Below are positions 2,712-49,368 of a stretch of DNA of 64,000 bases, in pieces. Numbering within the stretch: the first letter of the stretch is position 1; every line of letters begins with the position of its first letter. The DNA comes from Diplonema japonicum (Eukaryota > Protista > Euglenozoa: Diplonemea): assembly GCA_964019335.1 (NCBI GenBank), contig OZ025653.1, positions 496,001 to 560,000 on the forward strand. Reading direction: 5' to 3'. The notes below the pieces were generated by a model, which had not been told where the DNA came from, searched no databases, and saw nothing but the letters and a program-made list of their open reading frames with translations. The translations under genes were made by a program, and so were the position numbers.

Positions 2712-5572
2712 TTACGGTTCGTAAGAATGAAGCACGTAAGTCAGTTTCCTTGAAGCAGAGGCTTGGGTTTCCCGCAAGGATATGTCACTTGGTGAAGCAT
2801 TGTTGGCAGTGACCTTCTCGTGTTCCTGCGCGAATACGTGGGTCAAGGCAATGACATATGAGCGGATGCTGACGTCCTTGACCTGCCCAGCAGTGAGACG
2901 CTTCTTGGCAGCCACAGCCTCAACGATAGCAGCAGCGTTGCTGTCACTAGACAGCTGGCCACAGCTATACCCGAAGGGGTCTACCTCAGGGAACTGGTTC
3001 AACTGAGTGTACTGTGCCACAGCATTGTACATGACACCCTTGACGTCAGCCACCCCCATCTTCAGGTCGAGCAGCTGAGGGAAGGATTCCACAATATTGT
3101 ACACGCTAAGCAGTCTCGGCCACACTTGCTCGTTCTGCGGTGTGAGGGTCGTCCACCACTCCTCCCCGTGAACAGGCTCCACTTTTTTTTTTTTTATTTT
3201 TACTACACACAAAAAAAAAAAAAATAAGAATACTTTGTTTCGGGAACAGTGTTTCCAGCTGTATCTTCATGACTTGCAGCTCCAAGGCTGAGGTCTGCGG
3301 GAACCTGTTTTGCCTCCGCTGCGGCTGTGCGGGGTTTGTGCCAGGAGGGGGGAAGGTTTGCGACAATGGCAGTGCAGACAGGGTTGCGGCAAGATTGTGA
3401 ATACTTGTCGTAGTGTCGGTGTTCCATGCCTTGGTGTCCAGTCCGCCCAACCCCACTGTCCATGCCGCCGCGTTGAGCGAGTGCTGCTCTGGGAACGGAT
3501 CAGGAGGGAGCGTGATGTTGCACGGCTGCTGGTGCTGCGTTGGCGGAGGCACCAAAGCACCGCCAGCAGGGCTGTCCGTCAGATCTAAAATCTCTGCAAG
3601 AATCGCGTCCACATCAGCCTCCGCTGCAGGCACCGCAGGCCTCCTCGTCGAGCTGTTCCTCCTCGGCATCTTCGACGCGCATACCAGCAACGGGCACAGG
3701 CCCGCCGCCACAGCTGCAACAGATGCCTGTTTTTTTTTTTTTTTCTTCTTCTTCTTTTTTTTTGTCTACCCCGCATCCATACCGGTTTGACTTCCCTCAC
3801 TTCTCCGTGCTCCTCTGTCCTCGCCGTTTCGTTCCAGTTCGACAGCTGTTTTTTTTTTTTCCTTTACATTTTAAATTCCATACCAAGGTGCCTGTAGTCG
3901 GCCACTCAGGGGTGCTGTCCGAGTTGATTGTGGCGGAAAGCCTAGCCTTGTCCACAGAGGCGTCGAGAGACTGGTGTGAGGTTAAAGAGGGAGACAAGGG
4001 TATACCTGTATGCTCTGAGACAGGCCGCCGTCCTCTCTTTCATTCTTCGCAGCCTCCGAGAGCTGCTCCTGTACTGCGTTCATGTCCACATTCTGTGGAT
4101 CGCCCAACAGTCGCAACGACACTGCCCGAGGAGGGTGTGTTTGGGACAGTCTGAAGTCCACTTTGCACCCCACCTGGAGCTTATGGGAGTGCTCCTTCTT
4201 CACACTCTTATAGTTAAACGAAAAGGCACCCACGCTCGGGAGGGCTACCAAGGGGTCATTACCTAATCTTATGATTAATCCCTGCGCGTTTAGTGTTTCG
4301 TTCAGTTTATTTTCTTTTGCCTTCACTACCTTAGTCCTCCTCTGACTCAATACTAGATGCAGTAAGTCCGGGTTAGTAGAAAGGGGGTTTTCCGATTTGG
4401 CACTATCTTGGGTAGTGTTTAGCCCGGTAGAGTTCGCCAACGGCATTATACTAAGTGTATTTGCGAGGCCGACACCTCCCATTGTGGAGGCCTTTACAGA
4501 GTGCTCGAGGGGGAGGCCCACATAGCTGTGGTGGTGTGTGGTGGGGAGGGGAGGGGGAGGGGTGATGTATACCTAGTAACTAGGGGCTTTTCAGCAGGAC
4601 TTCCGTTGCTCCATTTCCCAATCGAGTCATTCAAGGAAGGCTGTTGCGGTGCGGGGGTCTGAATGGTGGTCTGAGGTGGGACTGCTTGTGACGCAGAAGG
4701 GATGGCAGCAGGCTGGGGTTGCAAAGGTGTCCCCTGCTGCATGATGTTTCTTGGGAGATGCTGTTGCTGCTGCTGTGGCTGCGCTGGCTGTTGCTGCTGC
4801 GGCTGCTGCAGGGGTTGCGCTGCGCCCTGCGGCTGCGCCGCACCCGGCGTCGGTGAAACCTGCACGTGCTGAAGCTGCTGCTGCTGTTGAACAAGCTTCT
4901 GCTGCTGCATGTTGTGCTGTTGTTGAAGCTGTTGGAGCTGCTGCTGTTGCTGCTGAATCTTCTGCTGTTGTTGCTGCAACTGCTGTTGCTGTAACTGTTT
5001 TTAGTGTACTTGTATACAATATTATTCGCACACCTGAATAGCAGCATTCCACTGCTGCATGTTGACGTTCATGCCACTAGGCATGCTAGGCTGCATGCCA
5101 AGGTGGGGGACGAGGGTGCTCATCGGCAGCACCTGCGCACCGGCAGCATCCTTCTGCCCCCATTGCATGTTGTTTGTAGCTTCGAACTGAGGTTGCTGCT
5201 GCAGCTGCTGAGCAACATGGAACTGCTTGAGGAAAGCAGCGTCGGGTTCAGGAGGCTGTGCGGGTGGTGAAAAATTTGTGGAGAACATACATCAAGGAGG
5301 GACGGCTGTCGACTTGACGGCGTGCTCCCGAGGCCGGCAGCCGCAGCAGCAGCAGCAGCCTGTGACAGCTCGTCTTCCCCGTGAGCAAACCCACACTGGT
5401 CACCGTACTTACAGTGTCCCCGGTCCCAGTGCCTGCACAGTGATGTTTTCAACATCGTTGTCTTCAGCCCGATCAACGGGCTAGCTGTGGTCTCGCCTTT
5501 CCTCTTCGCTCTCTTCTTCCCCGCAGCAGACAGCAACGGCCCCATCGTCATGTCGTCCATTTCCATTGCCAT
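2712..5572 (-). CDS. CCCH zinc-finger RNA-binding protein with poly-Q region and a cold-shock/OB-like segment (about 8 exons)
   Basis: KTSLCRHWDRGHCKYGDQCGFAHG (C-x8-C-x5-C-x3-H). ORFs 5120-5572, 5022-5288, 4494-4979, 3982-4521, 3797-3997, 3585-3800, 3106-3711 and 2712-3212 join in frame through short GT-AG introns (e.g. 3182-3233). Confidence 0.75.
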
Positions 5573-28093: not shown

Positions 28094-29218
28094 CTAAAGC
28101 TCGTCGTCGTGTCTCAGGTTCAGAATAACGAACTCGTTCATGTCCTCAGCGGTCCTGTCACCTGTGTAGAGCAGCGGAGGCTGAGATTCCATCTTAAGAT
28201 ACAATGTAGGGTAGCTTTCTACTTCATAAAGAGCAGGAGCGTCAGTTGATGACACATCCATTGCGATGAGGGTGACATGAGTGGGGAGGAGGGAGGCCAG
28301 ACGGAGGAAATCCGGTTTCATTTCGGTGCAGTGTGTGCACCATGGCGCGTAGAACAGGATGAAAAAATTCTTGGGGAGCTTTTCCACGTACTCGTCAGTA
28401 AACTGGTACGGGGCGGCATGGGTTACCTTCCCCTTGAAACCATCGTCCTCCTCTTCCTCTCGGTCGTGTAGGTCGATGGTGCCCTCGTTTATAGAGCCTA
28501 TAAAGGTTTCAAATGTTTTTGCGGAAAATCTTTCCACGTTCATGCTCCCTGCTTTGTTTTTATTGTCATCGGTCAGAGTATCCACGTGGTAGGAAGCCGT
28601 ATCGCCTGGTGAAAGGTAAAATATGCATAACGGGTTGTTTTTAGCGATTTTTGCCATCCTTTTCACAATGTATTTTACCATTTTTTCGTTTGAATACGCG
28701 ATTTTTTCAACGACAGTCACGTGGTTCATTCCAGGGAGGATATCGTCCGATGGAGTGTGTAAGCTGTCTCTCCAGTTTACCACCATTTTTGACCTTTCGG
28801 AGATGAATTGGTAGAACTCCTTCTTCGTTTCTCTGTTGAGCTTCCCCGTTGTTGGTGTGTACAGGAACGGGTTCAGTTTTTCTTTTTCCATGGTTATCAT
28901 GAGTTCCGGGAGGTGTAGTTCCGCGGAGAAGTCCGACCCCTCTTCGTCTACCCACGCACCGCATCTTGTTTCAATCTTCTTCACCCTGCTGCAGAGGATT
29001 TCGCAGATTTCCATGGCATCCTCATCGTTTTCTCCCACATGAATCATGATCTTCACGCCTTTGCCTTTTAAAAAATCCCGTTCTTCTTCCTCCGTCCCCA
29101 CTTCAGTTATCAGCACCTGCTCTTCCGACAGCGTCTGCGGGCCGGCACCCATTTCACCAAAATCCCCAAACCCTTCAACCACCATCAACAATATTGGGAG
29201 AGCTGTTATCGAATTCAT
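28094..29218 (-). CDS. Thioredoxin/PDI-family ER protein
   Basis: Signal-peptide-like start, FYAPWCTHC active site, YEVESYPTL, and C-terminal DDEL ER-retention-like motif. Confidence 0.85.
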   Translation of the reverse strand: MNSITALPILLMVVEGFGDFGEMGAGPQTLSEEQVLITEVGTEEEERDFLKGKGVKIMIHVGENDEDAMEICEILCSRVKKIETRCGAWVDEEGSDFSAELHLPELMITMEKEKLNPFLYTPTTGKLNRETKKEFYQFISERSKMVVNWRDSLHTPSDDILPGMNHVTVVEKIAYSNEKMVKYIVKRMAKIAKNNPLCIFYLSPGDTASYHVDTLTDDNKNKAGSMNVERFSAKTFETFIGSINEGTIDLHDREEEEDDGFKGKVTHAAPYQFTDEYVEKLPKNFFILFYAPWCTHCTEMKPDFLRLASLLPTHVTLIAMDVSSTDAPALYEVESYPTLYLKMESQPPLLYTGDRTAEDMNEFVILNLRHDDEL

Positions 29219-29361
29219 TTTTTTTTTGTTCCTTTCTTTTTTTTTTTTTGTAGGTTCGAAGAGAACACAAGAAGAATGGGGAGGATGGAATAATAAAAAA
29301 AAGTTGTACAGGTACAAATACGGGGGGGAGAGGGGATAACTATACCAAGAGGGAAGAAAAA

Positions 29362-29898
29362 GAAGAAGAAGAAACTATTCTGTTAACTGTATCGTCCAAT
29401 ACTACCTATAGGCGCTCTTGCAACGACCACCACAGCCATCGCCAACGTGCCAAAAAATGGGCTAAACTCGCACACTGGTGTGAGCTTCAAGGGAGCTAAA
29501 CGTTTCAGACATGGCGTGCCACACCCATAGGCCTCACGACCGGGGAGGGGGACATTTATCTTTCGCCCGTAAGCTAGAGTGCGCATGCATCCCCAGCTCG
29601 CTTTGGGAGGTGTTGCCAACACCTGGGTCGCTTCGCGGTCCGACCTGCTGCCCAATTCAAAGCGCGGTTGCGGTGAATCCAAGCCCCCTAAGCATCGACA
29701 CGATTAACAAAGGGGTTTGTTACGCCGGGATATCTTGTTCACCAATGCTCCATACGCCCCCTGTTGCCAGTTCGCCGGATGAGCATACTGCAGGGTCTTC
29801 CACTCATCCGTTGCCCGGTGGGTACCACGAGGAGGTCAGCAACAATTCTATACTTTTGGCCACGTAGGGCCTGTTCTACATTTAGTATAGTCCCACCT
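29362..29898 (-). mobile_element. Putative non-autonomous retroelement (SINE/SIDE-like) headed by an HDV-like ribozyme
   Basis: GC-rich, hairpin-dense island with no credible protein. Its 5' end coincides with ribozyme G1 and it has a 3' (TTC)n tail. Candidate low-complexity TSD GAAGAAAAA at 29353-29361 and 29899-29907. Confidence 0.55.
29761..29897 (-). ncRNA. HDV-like (double-pseudoknot) self-cleaving ribozyme
   Basis: Minus strand: P1 GGUGGG(A)/(A)CCCACC; J1/2 hairpin CUAUACU/AGUAUAG; P2 UUGUUGCUG/UGGCAACAG; P3 ACC/GGU with L3 UCCUCGU; P1.1 GG then GCAA; P4 CGGAUGAG/CUCAUCCG; J4/2 GCGAAC containing the catalytic C. Confidence 0.88.
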
Positions 29899-30191
29899 GA
29901 AGAAAAAAAACCTTGGTGGATAAAAAGAGTTGATGATACCCCCACGGTCTTCCCCGTTTCTTTGAACTCATCTAAAAAAGAGAAAGCCGATAATAAAAAA
30001 AAGGGGGGCGGATGGAGAAGAAGTCAGAGGAAGAACAAAAACAAAAAAAAGCGTTACTTTTTTTTTTTCTCGTTTTTTCTTTTTTTTTTTTTCGTGTCGT
30101 TGTACAAACAAAAAAAGGGGGAGAAAGGGAGGGGGAGAAAAGTTACAATTTAAAAAAAAAGGGGGGGGGGAAAGTGGTACAAAATACAATT

Positions 30192-31106
30192 TTAGCTCTC
30201 TTCATCAGAATCACCGTCGCCATCACTGTCCACATAGCGAATGTCCAAATCGGTGTCAACCTTATTCACGGAACTGCTTCTTCCCTTTGATGTGTCCAAG
30301 CCTCGTTCGTTTCTCTTTTGAAGCCAGAGCTTCCTGTATGCCTCGCGTTGCCCTTCGATGGCCTTTTCCTGCTCATCGACCTTCTTCCGCATGTCGTCTG
30401 TGAGTATAGTATCTTCCACGTCAAAACCTTTGATAACAGTGAATCCCGTGGAGAACCGTTGTGCTGGTTTTGTTTGATTGTCTTGAATGACTTGAAATGC
30501 AACACTACCGGATCTTCGAAAAGGCTCTGGGCTGACGCTCATACGTTTGTAACTGCTTGAGAGACGTGAGACGTTGCCGGTGGAGAATTTTCGCTGGACT
30601 TGCGGGGGAGGGGGTGGAGGGGGCTGATTCACACTGCTTCGTCGCCGGCTGAACGACAAGCTGCCTGAGGACAGGCGTTCCCATTTCTGGGCGTGTGATG
30701 ATGTTCGTGAGAGAGACCTTTGCAGAGCGGGTGTGTCGCCCTCCAATGTGTGCAGCGACAAGTTGCTGTACATACTGCTGTTGCACGACATGTCCGAAGA
30801 CCTGAACGCAATGGTGCTCTTCACCTGGTCAACAACCTCCTCGTCAGACCACTCCTTCTCCTTCGCCAGCCCCGGTACTATCTTTTCCTTGAACGTTTTG
30901 AACGTTACGTACCTCTTTCGTTCCTTCGGCAGCACCTTCATGAACAGTAGCTCCGCCTCTGCTTGTGTGAACATTGGACTCAGCATCTCGCTCTCCTTGC
31001 ACAATCTCACAAACCTCGAAATGTCCATCATCTGTTTTGTTCCCCCTGTGCTTAACCGGCCCTTTCCAAACGAGCAGAACTCATCAAAAGCCTGTTTCAA
31101 CGACAT
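30192..31106 (-). CDS. TPPP/p25-alpha domain protein
   Basis: LKQAFDEFCSFG...MDISRFVRLCKES...AELLFMKV...RYVTFKTF matches the p25-alpha N-terminal domain; Ser/Arg-rich tail. Confidence 0.8.
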   Translation of the reverse strand: MSLKQAFDEFCSFGKGRLSTGGTKQMMDISRFVRLCKESEMLSPMFTQAEAELLFMKVLPKERKRYVTFKTFKEKIVPGLAKEKEWSDEEVVDQVKSTIAFRSSDMSCNSSMYSNLSLHTLEGDTPALQRSLSRTSSHAQKWERLSSGSLSFSRRRSSVNQPPPPPPPQVQRKFSTGNVSRLSSSYKRMSVSPEPFRRSGSVAFQVIQDNQTKPAQRFSTGFTVIKGFDVEDTILTDDMRKKVDEQEKAIEGQREAYRKLWLQKRNERGLDTSKGRSSSVNKVDTDLDIRYVDSDGDGDSDEES

Positions 31107-31289
31107 TTTTTCTTTTTCTCTCTCTTTTTCAAATTTGTTTCCCTCCACCTAGTGGTATTGACTTGGCGGGGGACAGGAATACAAGGAGACAATAAAAAGA
31201 AAAGTACTACAACAAAATTCTTATTTGAATAACAGCTCTATGGAAAATATACATGGTGGAAGAATGGGGGGGGGGGGGGGCGTTGACTC

Positions 31290-36628: not shown

Positions 36629-38783
36629 CTATTCAATGTCGGGTAAGGTGACAGCTTCTTGTTTCTTCACAGCCGCCAGCCAGGCGTCCCTGCTTTCTTT
36701 GCTTGCCTTGTACCGTTGTGCGGTCCATTCTGAAAACCATTTTTCCTTCTCCCTGACGGTGCTTCGTAAGGCAGCGGGTGCCGTCAACATACAAGGTTTG
36801 AAACTTATCTTGGACCCTGAGTGTAGAGAAACAGCAGGGCGGACCTCAAGGCGGCCGATCACCGCGGGTAGTTGTATGATAGCCGCTGTTAAGCGGTTTA
36901 CAAAGAACACCACCTCGCGGTTGAGCATGTCAACGACGATGCCGATTGTGTCGCCTTGTGTGTAGGTTAGGGGTGCGCCACTGGGCCCCGGTAGGGTTGT
37001 TATCCTTCTCCCCATCCCGGAGATGAGGGAAGTCTGGCTCCACCATGCTATGCCATGCACGCCCCCTATGTACGATGAGTGTGCCTCGACATCGTGCGCC
37101 CTGAACCACTGGTTCGTGATCAACCCTACTGTGACGTGCTCCGCAGGCCCACACTGCTCGACTACAATCTCGTAAGCACACGCAGGGTGCCCGTCCTGCG
37201 ATGGTGCTATGGATGGGTCACATGGGATAGTCGCAATATCCATGAATCCCTTCTGCAAAAACTCAATCAGCGTGCCATCGGGAGACATGCTCAAGTTCTG
37301 GGTGTTCAGCGCTTCCAAGATCGCCGACGGCTGGATGAGCTCTGGGGTTGTCAGCAGGAATGCTTTGTGTACAAAACAGCCTTCTGCACCCATATCCACG
37401 CCACCACAGCAATCCCAGCACGACCCCATTGGGGTGCAGAATGCGGCTTTGCCCTTGAGCCGTAAGGAGTACAGCTTGCGGGGTGTTAGCGGTTCATGCA
37501 CTTCAGTGAAATTCACATTATGGCGTTTCTTCTCATTTTTAGCACAACAGCAGCCGTCAATGTGGTACCGATATTCACCAAGGTGGTAGCACGGCCTGCT
37601 CTTGTCGTCAGCCACGATGCATCCTTGGCCGTATTCCTCGTGACCACCGCAGCATGACCACACTTCGTTGTAGGTGCCGGTGTGTGTCACTTCTGCAGTG
37701 GCGAGCCAGTCCGCAAGGCGCACGCGGCGCGAAGCTTCCTCCTTCTTTCGTAACTCAGTTTGTCGCAAGGTACGCTCGGCTTCCTCCTCAGGGAACAAGA
37801 AAGGTGACATCATTGCTTCAGAGGGAGGGAACTCTGATGCGCTAAACGACTTCGACACCTTCGAACGTCTCTTCTTTCGCTTGTTCCTTGCCTGAGGCTT
37901 CTCGTCATTGTCCCCTTGTACGTCTGGTGCTTCAAATTTGATTTGCAAACCTGCGAACACCCCGATAGTATCGTACTCCAAAGCCTGCAGCTCCCTCATG
38001 GCAGTGTGCCACAACAAAGCTGTGTCTGCCAGCTGTGTGCGCCCCACCCCCTCCCTGCACAAGACCTCGTTCTCGGTGACGGCAAAACGCTGCCTCCGGA
38101 ACTTCTCCAACATGCGCTGTTTGTCTCGTTCCTCCTTTNNNNNNNNNNNNNNNNNNNNNNNNNNNNNNNNNNNNNNNNNNNNNNNNNNNNNNNNNNNNNN
38201 NNNNNNNNNNNNNNNNNNNNNNNNNNNNNNNNNNNNNNNNNNNNNNNNNNNNNNNNNNNNNNNNNNNNNNNNNNNNNNNNNNNNNNNNNNNNNNNNNNNN
38301 NNNNNNNNNNNNNNNNNNNNNNNNNNNNNNNNNNNNNNGGAAGGCTAAGGACTGGTTGTCGCAGAGATGGGCGAGCTCGTCAGGGGTGCTGCCGGAGTCG
38401 TCGATGATGGAAGGATCAGCACCACAGCGTAGGAGCTGGTCGACAACCTGTGGGTGATTGTTGTAAGCGGCGAAGTGGAGGGGTGACCAGTGGTTGTTTG
38501 TAAGCTTATTGATAGAGCTCCGAGAGCGCAGAAGCACGTCGATGACAGCACCGTGGCGGTTGTTCGCAGCTGCATGGTGTAGTGCAGACCACCCGTGTTT
38601 GTCCGTCACATTCACTCTATTGTTGTTTGCCAGCAGCCATCGCCGCACTGCCTCTACATCGCCACCCACAACACCCTCTTTCAGCTCATTGAAATTCTTC
38701 TTTGCTGCTGCAGCCACAGGGCTGTCTCCTTCCCCCGGTTCGATGTTCGACCCCACCCCATCTGACAATGACTCCCTCGACAT
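36629..38783 (-). CDS. Ankyrin-repeat, BTK-like zinc motif and SPRY/B30.2 protein (spans the assembly gap; could be two genes)
   Basis: Ankyrin repeats GWSALHHAA and HWSPLHFAA (38345-38783). HTGTY..VWSCCG...GC and YHLGEY...WDCCG...GC motifs. SPRY AYEIVV...VTVGL...YTQGDTIGIVVD...VFFVN...RPAVSL. Confidence 0.6.
38139..38338. other. Assembly gap (200 N)
   Basis: Run of n. Confidence 1.
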
Positions 38784-48924: not shown

Positions 48925-49368
48925 AAGGAAGTACAATTAAAAAAAAAACAAAAAAAAGGGGGGAGGGGAGGGTGAGCTAGCCTGTTTAGATACGATATGA
49001 AAAAAAAGAAATTTAGTGGGGGGGGGATGGAAAAGGGGGATATCGGAAACAAAACAGATACACTTTCTTTTCCCGCTCCCCCACCCACCCGGAAGAAAAA
49101 AAAGGAAAAAAAAAACCACACAAAAAGTAATTTTATTAAGAACATTAAAAAACAAAAAAACGCCGATTCGTGAGTTTTTTTTTTTTTTTTTGTATCACGC
49201 CTTCTCTTGTTGTTTTCCTTCTCTTTTTTTTATGTAACAAGATATAAAAAAAAATCGAAAAGAAAAAGCAAAAAGGGGGGGGAGGGGTAAATATCTATAC
49301 TGGATTGAAGAAGGGAATAGAAAAGAGGGAAACAAAAAAGGAAAAAAAAAAAAGGAAAACGTTGATTT

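What the first reader, a model, noticed from the sequence alone, without database searches (positions are those of the whole stretch)
29761..29897. Near-canonical HDV-like self-cleaving ribozyme, sense to the gene cluster, between the TPPP and PDI genes
Seen in sequence: every element of the HDV nested double pseudoknot is present in order on the minus strand. These are P1 GGUGGG/CCCACC, a structured J1/2 insert, a 9-bp P2, P3 ACC-UCCUCGU-GGU, GG for P1.1, GCAA, an 8-bp P4 and J4/2 GCGAAC. Established: ACC-UCCUCGU-GGU is the P3/L3 of R2-type retrotransposon ribozymes, GGGCAAC...GCGAA matches the genomic HDV core, and such ribozymes process the 5' ends of non-LTR retroelements including trypanosomatid L1Tc/ingi. 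Inference: it would cut the presumed polycistronic pre-mRNA about 295 nt downstream of the TPPP stop, just 5' of G at 29897. It could free a retroelement RNA and/or act as a protein-independent processing or decay signal for the neighbouring mRNAs. The seventh P1 position is an A-A mismatch, which may lower activity.
Basis: partly seen in the sequence, partly recalled or inferred. Interest (0 to 1): 0.92.

Follow-up and report, generated by a model that had tools for sequence, protein, structure and literature searches.

The report
Ribozyme-headed SINE-like retroposon copy
The flagged 137 bases are a complete HDV-like self-cleaving ribozyme motif at the exact 5' end of a roughly 540-bp mobile repeat, an expected arrangement for retroposons that ride on host transcripts but found here in a new organism and at high copy number; cleavage itself is untested.

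Summary
On the minus strand at 29897-29761, every HDV-like element is present in order: P1, a 45-nt J1/2 insert, P2, P3/L3, P1.1, P4 and J4/2 with a GCGAAC catalytic-C motif. A descriptor requiring L3 = UCCUCG finds only this site in the window, against 0.0016 expected by chance.

It is not a single-locus host signal. It heads a dispersed SINE-like repeat, family A (window 29897-29375 plus a T-rich tail). About 21 copies keep the ribozyme, and many 5'-truncated copies keep the common 3' end.

A second, much larger family (B, about 330 nt) has the same core:
- It gave 1,543 first-look BLAST candidates.
- Its P1, P2 and P4 helices differ from family A by compensatory changes.

All 16 full family A copies and all 20 family B copies examined begin at the first P1 nucleotide, the predicted cleavage site. 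Insertions lie in sense-strand T-runs and are mostly sense to neighbouring genes.

Best reading: the ribozyme frees the retroposon RNA from read-through transcripts, as in R2 and L1Tc/NARTc. Catalysis is untested, and the public runs gave only contigs. Other first-stage notes on this genome flag similar elements on other DNA. I class it as a new member of a known kind, of moderate interest.

The parts
29892..29897 (-). P1 5' strand GGUGGG. The predicted cleavage is between A29898 and G29897. A29891 is the unpaired seventh position.
   Evidence: Sequence. Pairs with 29817-29822. All 16 full family A copies begin here after a T-run plus 0-4 variable nt. The family B equivalent is a 7-bp P1 with one both-sided change.
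29846..29890 (-). J1/2 insert of 45 nt, with a predicted internal hairpin (CUAUACU/AGUAUAG and GGCC/GGCC).
   Evidence: The hairpin is not kept in variants L027, L021 and L005 and is replaced by unrelated sequence in family B, so it is probably dispensable.
29837..29845 (-). P2 5' strand UUGUUGCUG.
   Evidence: Pairs with 29761-29769 over 9 bp, 3 of them G-U. One both-sided change relative to family B, plus pair-preserving single changes in L079 and L034.
29824..29836 (-). P3-L3-P3': ACC UCCUCGU GGU. The CC of L3 forms P1.1.
   Evidence: Invariant across families A and B. Identical to the consensus of Rfam drz-agam-1 over this stretch (alignment).
29817..29822 (-). P1 3' strand CCCACC.
29811..29816 (-). 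GG of P1.1 followed by GCAA (J1.1/4).
   Evidence: GGGCAAC matches the HDV_ribozyme consensus. The GG is invariant.
29776..29810 (-). P4 stem CGGAUGAG/CUCAUCCG with a 19-nt loop.
   Evidence: Three both-sided compensatory changes relative to family B, and 100% of cells paired.
29770..29775 (-). J4/2 GCGAAC, with the candidate catalytic C at 29774.
   Evidence: CGAAC is invariant in both families. It aligns with GGCuAA / GGCGAA of the Rfam HDV models.
29761..29769 (-). P2 3' strand UGGCAACAG.
29375..29897 (-). Whole family A element (523 nt), from the ribozyme head to the common 3' end ...ACAGAAUAG.
   Evidence: BLAST against the own genome finds full copies at 93-99% identity and many 5'-truncated copies that keep the 3' end. 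Contigs from other copies diverge at 29372-29375. There is no tRNA-like part.
29357..29374 (-). T-rich tract after the element (UUUCUUCUUCUUCUUUUU). It is a tail and/or a target-site duplication.
   Evidence: Every copy is followed by a T-rich run of variable length.
29898..29910 (-). Upstream T-run plus CA (UUUUUUUUCUUCA). This is the remnant of the T-rich target, plus junction nucleotides.
   Evidence: T-runs precede both full and 5'-truncated copies. The 1-4 nt next to G1 vary between copies: CA, AA, A or none.
30192..31148 (-). Upstream neighbour: ORF with a p25-alpha (TPPP) domain.
   Evidence: Pfam PF05517, E = 2.9e-11.
28094..29317 (-). Downstream neighbour: ORF with a thioredoxin domain (PDI-like).
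   Evidence: Pfam PF00085, E = 1.4e-16.

Best explanation
Window 29897-29761 (minus strand) is the HDV-like self-cleaving ribozyme at the 5' terminus of a non-autonomous, SINE-like non-LTR retroposon, family A (about 523 nt plus a T-rich tract).

Proposed mechanism (inferred):
1. The element has no demonstrated promoter of its own. It sits in sense orientation inside a T-rich intergenic tract, so it is transcribed as part of the host read-through or polycistronic RNA.
2. The ribozyme folds into the nested double pseudoknot and cuts between A29898 and G29897.
3. This releases an RNA that starts at G1 of P1.
4. A LINE-encoded endonuclease/reverse transcriptase copies that RNA in trans into new sense-strand T-runs.

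Shown here: the motif, its significance against chance, the repeat structure, the 5' boundary at G1, the truncation polarity, covariation with a sister family, and the orientation bias.

Inferred, not shown: actual cleavage, co-transcription, and the identity of the mobilising LINE.
For: 1. All HDV-like elements are present in order. The site is unique in the window under a descriptor expected 0.0016 times by chance. Three Rfam HDV-type models converge on the core.

2. It is a dispersed repeat:
- 35-41 BLAST matches.
- About 21 copies score 84-184 bits with the covariance model built from family A.
- Seven copies have a ribozyme identical to the window's.

3. The polarity matches a non-LTR element. 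Truncated copies start at query positions 135, 180, 197, 226, 244, 353 and 360, and all run to the common 3' end.

4. The 5' boundary is at G1. All 16 full family A copies and all 20 family B copies examined begin at G1 of P1, right after a T-run plus 0-4 variable nt.

5. Family B gave 1,543 first-look candidates, and the 40 scored were 99-100% identical. It keeps P3/L3, P1.1 and CGAAC unchanged but differs in the helices:
- 94% of cells are paired, against 22-50% when partners are slid.
- Both-sided compensatory changes: 1 in P1, 1 in P2 and 3 in P4.
- Family B has a full 7-bp P1.

6. Variants shared among family B copies fall in J1/2 and L4, or preserve pairing, such as G-U to A-U in P4.

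7. The longest flanking open frame is sense to the element in 26 of 29 loci.

8. Active natural HDV-like ribozymes tolerate the two unusual features:
- Large J1/2 inserts: 23 to over 700 nt in R2 (PMC3774820).
- A G-C closing pair in P1: present in the RF02682 and RF01787 consensus sequences.

9. An apparently intact LINE (ORF1 of 645 aa; ORF2 of 1332 aa with APE and RT domains) uses the same T-run targets.
Against: - No biochemical or read-level evidence of cleavage. The public runs were served only as assembled contigs from coded related organisms, and contigs cannot show RNA 5' ends.
- No Rfam family reaches its gathering score.
- Family A has only a 6-bp P1 with an A-A mismatch. P1 mismatches have been linked to weak or absent in vitro activity (PMC3774820).
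- About half of the copies carry CA or AA just upstream of G1. This needs non-templated addition, target-derived bases or an RNA start 1-2 nt upstream.
- The covariation rests on only two lineages. The alignment was fitted to P1/P3/P4 by the model, although P2 and P1.1 were not in the model.
- The MFE fold is no more stable than shuffles (z = -0.39). That method cannot score pseudoknots.
- No 3' sequence shared with the LINE was found, so the partner is unproven.
Confidence: 0.78

Rival explanations
1. The ribozyme also, or mainly, works for the host. By cutting the read-through RNA 294 nt after the p25-alpha stop and about 440 nt before the thioredoxin-gene ORF, it would act as a protein-independent processing or decay site for the neighbouring mRNAs. 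With over a thousand copies in sense-strand T-tracts, it could form a genome-wide processing layer.
For: - Sense orientation relative to flanking open frames in 26 of 29 loci.
- Position inside T-rich intergenic tracts next to downstream genes.
- The junction usually reads T-run + CAG|G, which resembles a splice-acceptor context.
- Precedent: Pr77/SIDER elements in Leishmania 3' UTRs have been linked to mRNA down-regulation (abstract of PMC4035085).
Against: - This copy is 98-99% identical to the other copies, so it is a recent insertion and not a conserved host feature.
- The orientation bias is equally explained by insertion into sense-strand T-runs.
- There are no expression or end-mapping data.
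Confidence: 0.12
2. The motif descends from a ribozyme but is inactive or irrelevant in family A, because of the A-A mismatch and 6-bp P1. The uniform 5' ends would then come from transcription initiating at or next to the CA|G junction through an internal promoter, as Pr77 does in L1Tc/NARTc.
For: - CA precedes G1 in about half of the copies.
- P1 mismatches have been associated with loss of in vitro activity (PMC3774820).
- L1Tc combines a promoter and a ribozyme in the same 77 nt (PMC3383444).
Against: - The nucleotides before G1 vary (CA, AA, A, none, CC, G), so they are not part of a fixed transcript start.
- The ribozyme core is invariant across two families that differ elsewhere, and the helices covary. 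That indicates selection on the fold in the master copies.
- Family B has a perfect 7-bp P1.
Confidence: 0.08
3. The match to the HDV descriptor is a chance resemblance within a repeat that has some other function.
For: - No Rfam gathering hit.
- The loose descriptor alone is expected 0.29 times per window.
Against: - The strict descriptor is expected 0.0016 times per window.
- There is exact identity to conserved HDV-like core strings.
- The motif sits exactly at the repeat's 5' end in two families, with compensatory changes between them.
Confidence: 0.02

Closest known systems
R2 retrotransposon 5' HDV-like ribozyme and drz-Agam-1 (Rfam RF01787)
   Same: - Nested double-pseudoknot layout.
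- Identical P3/L3/P3' string ACCUCCUCGUGG(U).
- A large J1/2 insert is tolerated.
- It sits at the 5' end of a non-LTR element that is co-transcribed with host sequence and cuts at or near the junction. The variable 5' junctions resemble those of Drosophila R2 (PMC3774820).
   Different: - Not inserted in 28S rDNA. The targets are dispersed sense-strand T-runs.
- The carrier is a short non-coding element, not an RT-encoding R2.
- It scores only 15.7 bits against a gathering score of 37 for RF01787.
L1TcRz / Pr77 ribozymes of trypanosomatid L1Tc, NARTc, ingi/RIME and SIDER (PMC3185411, PMC4035085)
   Same: - A euglenozoan host.
- An HDV-like ribozyme in the first nucleotides of LINE and SINE-like non-LTR elements.
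- High copy number in transcribed intergenic or UTR space, with a possible effect on host mRNAs.
   Different: - The core here is the canonical HDV/R2-type string (UCCUCGU, GGGCAAC, GCGAA). No direct sequence comparison with Pr77 was made here.
- The elements have T-rich 3' flanks and no poly(A).
- The LINE characterised here carries a spliced-leader-RNA-like 5' head instead of a ribozyme.
Non-autonomous R2-derived SIDE elements (PMC3414825)
   Same: Short non-coding derivatives that keep a 5' ribozyme and rely on an autonomous element's protein.
   Different: - SIDEs are internal-deletion derivatives that share both ends with R2.
- No sequence shared between families A or B and the LINE was found here, beyond the T-run target.
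Genomic HDV ribozyme (Rfam RF00094)
   Same: GGGCAAC after P1 and GGCGAA in J4/2 match the consensus, with the same helix order.
   Different: - 45-nt J1/2 insert.
- G-C rather than G-U closing pair.
- 6-bp P1.
- 21.7 bits against a gathering score of 50.

Membership tests
HDV-like self-cleaving ribozyme (structural class) | P1 helix of about 7 bp whose first 5' nucleotide is the cleavage site and whose 3' strand directly follows P3' | tested here: met
   GGUGGG/CCCACC is 6 bp plus an A-A mismatch. Family B has 7 bp, GGUGGUG/CAUCACC.
HDV-like self-cleaving ribozyme (structural class) | P2 pairing between the strand 5' of P3 and the 3' terminal strand, which creates the pseudoknot | tested here: met
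   9 bp, 3 of them G-U. 85% of cells are paired across families A and B, with one both-sided change. P2 was not part of the model used to align the rows.
HDV-like self-cleaving ribozyme (structural class) | 3-bp P3 closing a 7-8-nt L3 with the conserved UCCUCG string, and a 2-bp P1.1 between the L3 CC and the GG after P1 | tested here: met
   ACC-UCCUCGU-GGU and GG are invariant in all rows.
HDV-like self-cleaving ribozyme (structural class) | P4 stem followed by J4/2 carrying the catalytic C (C-G/U-A-A) | tested here: met
   8-bp P4 with 3 compensatory pairs relative to family B. GCGAAC contains C29774.
HDV-like self-cleaving ribozyme (structural class) | Site-specific Mg2+-dependent self-cleavage that yields 5'-OH and 2',3'-cyclic phosphate ends and depends on the J4/2 cytosine | not testable with these tools
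   Only assembled contigs of public runs were available.
Rfam families RF00094, RF02682 and RF01787 | Score at or above the curated gathering threshold | tested here: not met
   21.7 of 50, 18.9 of 44 and 15.7 of 37 bits. The J1/2 insert disrupts the modelled P1.
Non-LTR retroposon, non-autonomous (SINE-like) | Dispersed copies with a common 3' end and variable 5' truncation | tested here: met
Non-LTR retroposon, non-autonomous (SINE-like) | Target-site duplications flanking the copies | tested here: inconclusive
   The flanks are low-complexity T-runs. Clear examples exist, such as TTTTTTTAA at L101 and TTTT(T)AC around a truncated LINE copy. Most cannot be delimited.
Non-LTR retroposon, non-autonomous (SINE-like) | 3' tail or 3' sequence shared with an autonomous LINE partner | tested here: inconclusive
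   Families A and B and the APE+RT LINE all end in T-runs and insert in T-runs. I saw no shared 3' sequence and no poly(A).
Non-LTR retroposon, non-autonomous (SINE-like) | Pol III-type head derived from tRNA, 7SL or 5S | tested here: not met
   ARAGORN finds nothing and Rfam has no gathering hit in the window. The head is the ribozyme instead.
R2 clade element | Site-specific insertion in 28S rDNA | tested here: not met
   Copies lie on many contigs, between protein-coding open frames.
L1Tc/ingi Pr77-bearing elements | The conserved 77-nt Pr77 hallmark at the 5' end | not tested

The most novel reading that the evidence does not exclude
Over a thousand ribozyme-headed elements sit in sense-strand polypyrimidine tracts. 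Together they could act as a protein-independent cleavage layer on polycistronic pre-mRNAs in this euglenozoan. They would set or destabilise the 3' ends of upstream mRNAs and sit beside trans-splice acceptor-like T-run + CAG|G junctions. The element at 29897 would then shape expression of the p25-alpha and thioredoxin genes rather than being only a parasite's 5'-end device.
Probability: 0.12. Interest if true: 0.8.

Novelty: new member of a known kind. Interest (0 to 1): 0.5.

Why it matters
HDV-like ribozymes are already known to head co-transcribed non-LTR retroelements such as R2, RTE, and L1Tc/NARTc.

This finding adds:
- A canonical R2/HDV-type core heading two SINE-like families in a euglenozoan. 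Its spliced leader is closest to the variant I recall as diplonemid; that recollection is unverified.
- A copy number in the thousands.
- Unusual insertion into sense-strand T-runs, with no poly(A).

The two families offer a natural covariation pair and many near-identical substrates for testing ribozyme-dependent 5'-end formation. They also allow a test of whether such insertions alter processing of polycistronic transcripts.

Tried and rejected
- Rfam at gathering threshold on the whole window gave nothing. Only sub-threshold HDV-type hits appeared in a local E-value scan.
- The MFE fold was no better than shuffles. This is uninformative for a pseudoknot.
- MAFFT alignment of family A with family B mis-registered P1 and L3. 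The covariance model built from family A also shifted family B's P1 by 3 nt. A model built from family B gave a consistent alignment.
- The metagenome pattern scan for the core returned 120+ contigs, but those inspected were GC-rich bacterial coding DNA. None of 80 passed the descriptor.
- A pattern for other P3 variants with the same L3 in the own genome gave 40 hits against 106 for the reversed control, so there was no extra family of that type. After this call no more genome letters could be fetched.
- Public runs: all four candidate RNA runs were Logan contigs from coded relatives, so neither RNA 5' ends nor expression could be read.
- I considered the opposite polarity, with a poly(A) tail on the plus strand and the ribozyme antisense. 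I rejected it because truncated copies always lack the ribozyme end and because the LINE ORFs read toward its T-run end.
- I considered family B plus LINE chimeras formed by template switching. Nested insertion into family B's T-tract is the simpler reading.
- Weak model hits at window 3620-3777 and 49019-49108 are noise.
- Literature searches found no report of ribozyme-headed elements in diplonemids. They could not confirm which taxon owns the closest spliced-leader variant.

Full report
**1. The observation**

Read on the minus strand, 29897-29761 contains every element of an HDV-like nested double pseudoknot, in the canonical order and at the stated coordinates.
- P1 is GGUGGG/CCCACC. The seventh position is an A-A mismatch.
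- J1/2 is a 45-nt insert.
- P2 is 9 bp, three of them G-U.
- P3/L3 is ACC-UCCUCGU-GGU.
- GG for P1.1 is followed by GCAA.
- P4 is 8 bp.
- J4/2 is GCGAAC, with the candidate catalytic C at 29774.

Rfam reports nothing at gathering thresholds. A local scan puts sub-threshold hits of three HDV-type families (RF00094, RF02682, RF01787) on the same 29762-29854 stretch. These hits match the conserved core strings, but P1 fails because of the J1/2 insert.

I wrote my own descriptor to estimate chance.
- The loose form finds this site alone in the window, against 0.29 expected per 128 kb.
- With L3 required to be UCCUCG, the expectation falls to 0.0016 (5 hits in 398 Mb of simulated sequence).

The closing P1 pair is G-C rather than the G-U of HDV. 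The consensus of RF02682 and RF01787 also shows G-C there.

**2. What the site belongs to**

The stretch is not unique. BLAST against the window's own genome (62.5 Mb, 132 contigs) finds dozens of copies. The repeat, family A, runs from G29897 to ...ACAGAAUAG at 29375 and is followed by a T-rich tract.
- Sixteen or more copies are full length at 93-99% identity.
- Many others are truncated at the ribozyme end, at query positions 135, 180, 197, 226, 244, 353 and 360, but run to the common 3' end.

That is the 5'-truncation signature of non-LTR retroposition. It fixes the RNA sense as the ribozyme sense.

Full copies begin with GGUGGGA directly after a T-run plus 0-4 variable nucleotides, most often CA and sometimes none. 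Truncated copies are also preceded by T-runs. The T-runs therefore belong to the target, not to the element.

No tRNA-like or other known RNA head is present.

**3. A sister family and covariation**

Weak matches to the core led to family B, about 330 nt long.
- It gave 1,543 first-look BLAST candidates, and the 40 scored were 99-100% identical.
- A covariance model built from family A found about 3,100 first-look candidates in the genome. About 21 of the scored hits are family A at 84-184 bits, and most of the remaining scored hits are family B.

Family B keeps P3/L3 (with one extra L3 nucleotide), P1.1 and CGAAC unchanged. Its helices differ:
- P1 is a full 7-bp GGUGGUG/CAUCACC.
- The base of P4 is different.
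- P2 is altered.

I aligned 6 family A and 9 family B rows with a model built from family B.
- 94% of pair cells form standard pairs, against 22-50% when partners are slid.
- Five pairs change on both sides: P1 has 1, P2 has 1 and P4 has 3.
- P2 and P1.1 were not in the model used for aligning.
- Pair-preserving single changes also occur within family B: G-U to A-U in P4, C-G to U-G and U-G to U-A in P2.

All 20 family B copies fetched begin at the first P1 nucleotide after a T-run plus CA, AA, A, G, CC or nothing. Three of them have small deletions within the first ten nucleotides.

The caveat is that this amounts to two lineages, so the statistics are descriptive.

**4. Genomic setting**

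In 26 of 29 family A loci with a flanking open frame of at least 150 codons, the longest frame is sense to the element. The window copy follows this pattern. It lies between a p25-alpha ORF and a thioredoxin-domain ORF, all on the minus strand.

The genome holds an abundant LINE:
- ORF1 is 645 aa with no domain hit. ORF2 is 1332 aa with APE and RT domains.
- Subfamilies sit at 97-99%, 89% and 81% identity.
- It also ends in ...UUUGAG plus a T-run, and its truncated copies sit in T-runs.

It is therefore a plausible source of the machinery, but I found no 3' sequence shared with families A or B.

The full-length LINE 5' end is a 124-nt spliced-leader-RNA-like sequence, exon plus intron. It is 97% identical between subfamilies that are otherwise 79% identical. 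The exon resembles the SL variant listed as 'Euglenozoa 14' in PMC3795323. I recall that variant as diplonemid, but could not confirm this.

**5. Mechanism**

The best-supported reading is the known one for R2 and L1Tc/NARTc (PMC3774820, PMC3185411, PMC4035085):
1. The element is transcribed as part of a host read-through RNA.
2. The ribozyme cuts 5' of G1.
3. The freed RNA is reverse-transcribed at a new T-run.

The variable 1-4 nt at the 5' junction resemble the junction heterogeneity reported for Drosophila R2, whose ribozyme cuts exactly at the junction (PMC3774820).

How the 3' end forms is unknown, as is whether the T-tract is a U-rich tail or only a target duplication. One clear TSD is TTTTTTTAA at L101.

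**6. What could not be shown**

Cleavage itself could not be tested. The one sequencing-run search returned only coded runs kept as assembled contigs. Four of them may be RNA. All come from related organisms whose genes are about 96% identical and whose element copies are about 99% identical. Contigs cannot show RNA ends. One 573-nt contig stops at 29894, three bases inside G1, which is anecdotal.

A host-side role for this copy remains possible but has no support beyond position and orientation.

**7. Comparison and novelty**

Structurally the site meets every sequence-level feature of the HDV-like class. It fails only the curated Rfam thresholds. Functionally it matches the ribozyme-headed non-LTR elements already described, including non-autonomous ones (NARTc, SIDER, R2 SIDEs).

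The new points are:
- the host lineage;
- the canonical R2/HDV-type core, which contrasts with the Pr77 ribozymes known from trypanosomatid L1Tc/ingi elements (no direct sequence comparison was made here);
- the very high copy number of family B;
- the T-run targeting without poly(A).

Other first-stage notes on other parts of this genome describe similar elements. I did not test them.

My verdict is a real feature, a new member of a known kind, of moderate interest.

Noticed in passing
L056:122-450 (G000:C47:406021-406349) and more than 1,500 other places: Family B is a roughly 330-nt SINE-like element with an HDV-like ribozyme head. The 40 copies scored were 99-100% identical. It is the dominant ribozyme carrier in this genome.
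   Followed up: yes
L072 (reverse strand, oriented positions 949-1071) and L074 (oriented positions 795-917): Full-length copies of an APE+RT LINE begin, right after a T-run, with a 124-nt spliced-leader-RNA-like sequence (SL exon plus intron). It is 97% identical between LINE subfamilies that are otherwise 79% identical. There is no ribozyme at this LINE's 5' end.
   Followed up: partly
L084:76-100 and L074 oriented positions 702-739: Partial spliced-leader sequence is fused directly to a 5'-truncated family B copy, and is duplicated upstream of a LINE head. These may be template-switch or microhomology junctions involving SL RNA.
   Followed up: no
L068, L069, L070 and L056: Family B copies lie immediately 5' of LINE copies truncated at different points (LINE query positions 292, 2417, 2558 and 3073). 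This fits repeated insertion into the T-tract that follows an older element.
   Followed up: partly
G000:C66:427202-451851 and G000:C95:241490-283330 (L057, L059): Units spaced at about 8.1 kb each carry a 195-nt segment 88-94% identical to the 3' part of family A. The C66 unit (L057) also holds ORFs with Zeta_toxin and BspA-type LRR domains.
   Followed up: partly
L056:4174-5139: An ORF with Dicty_CAR and 7tm_2 (GPCR) domains lies next to a LINE. This is unusual for trypanosomatid-like genomes and fits a free-living euglenozoan.
   Followed up: no
window 38139-38338: A run of 200 N, either an assembly gap or withheld sequence.
   Followed up: no
window 29372-29906, laid against runs X1-X4: In contigs from related organisms, family A is about 99% identical to this genome while the neighbouring ORFs are about 96-97% identical. 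The family is therefore shared with relatives and better conserved than the genes.
   Followed up: partly
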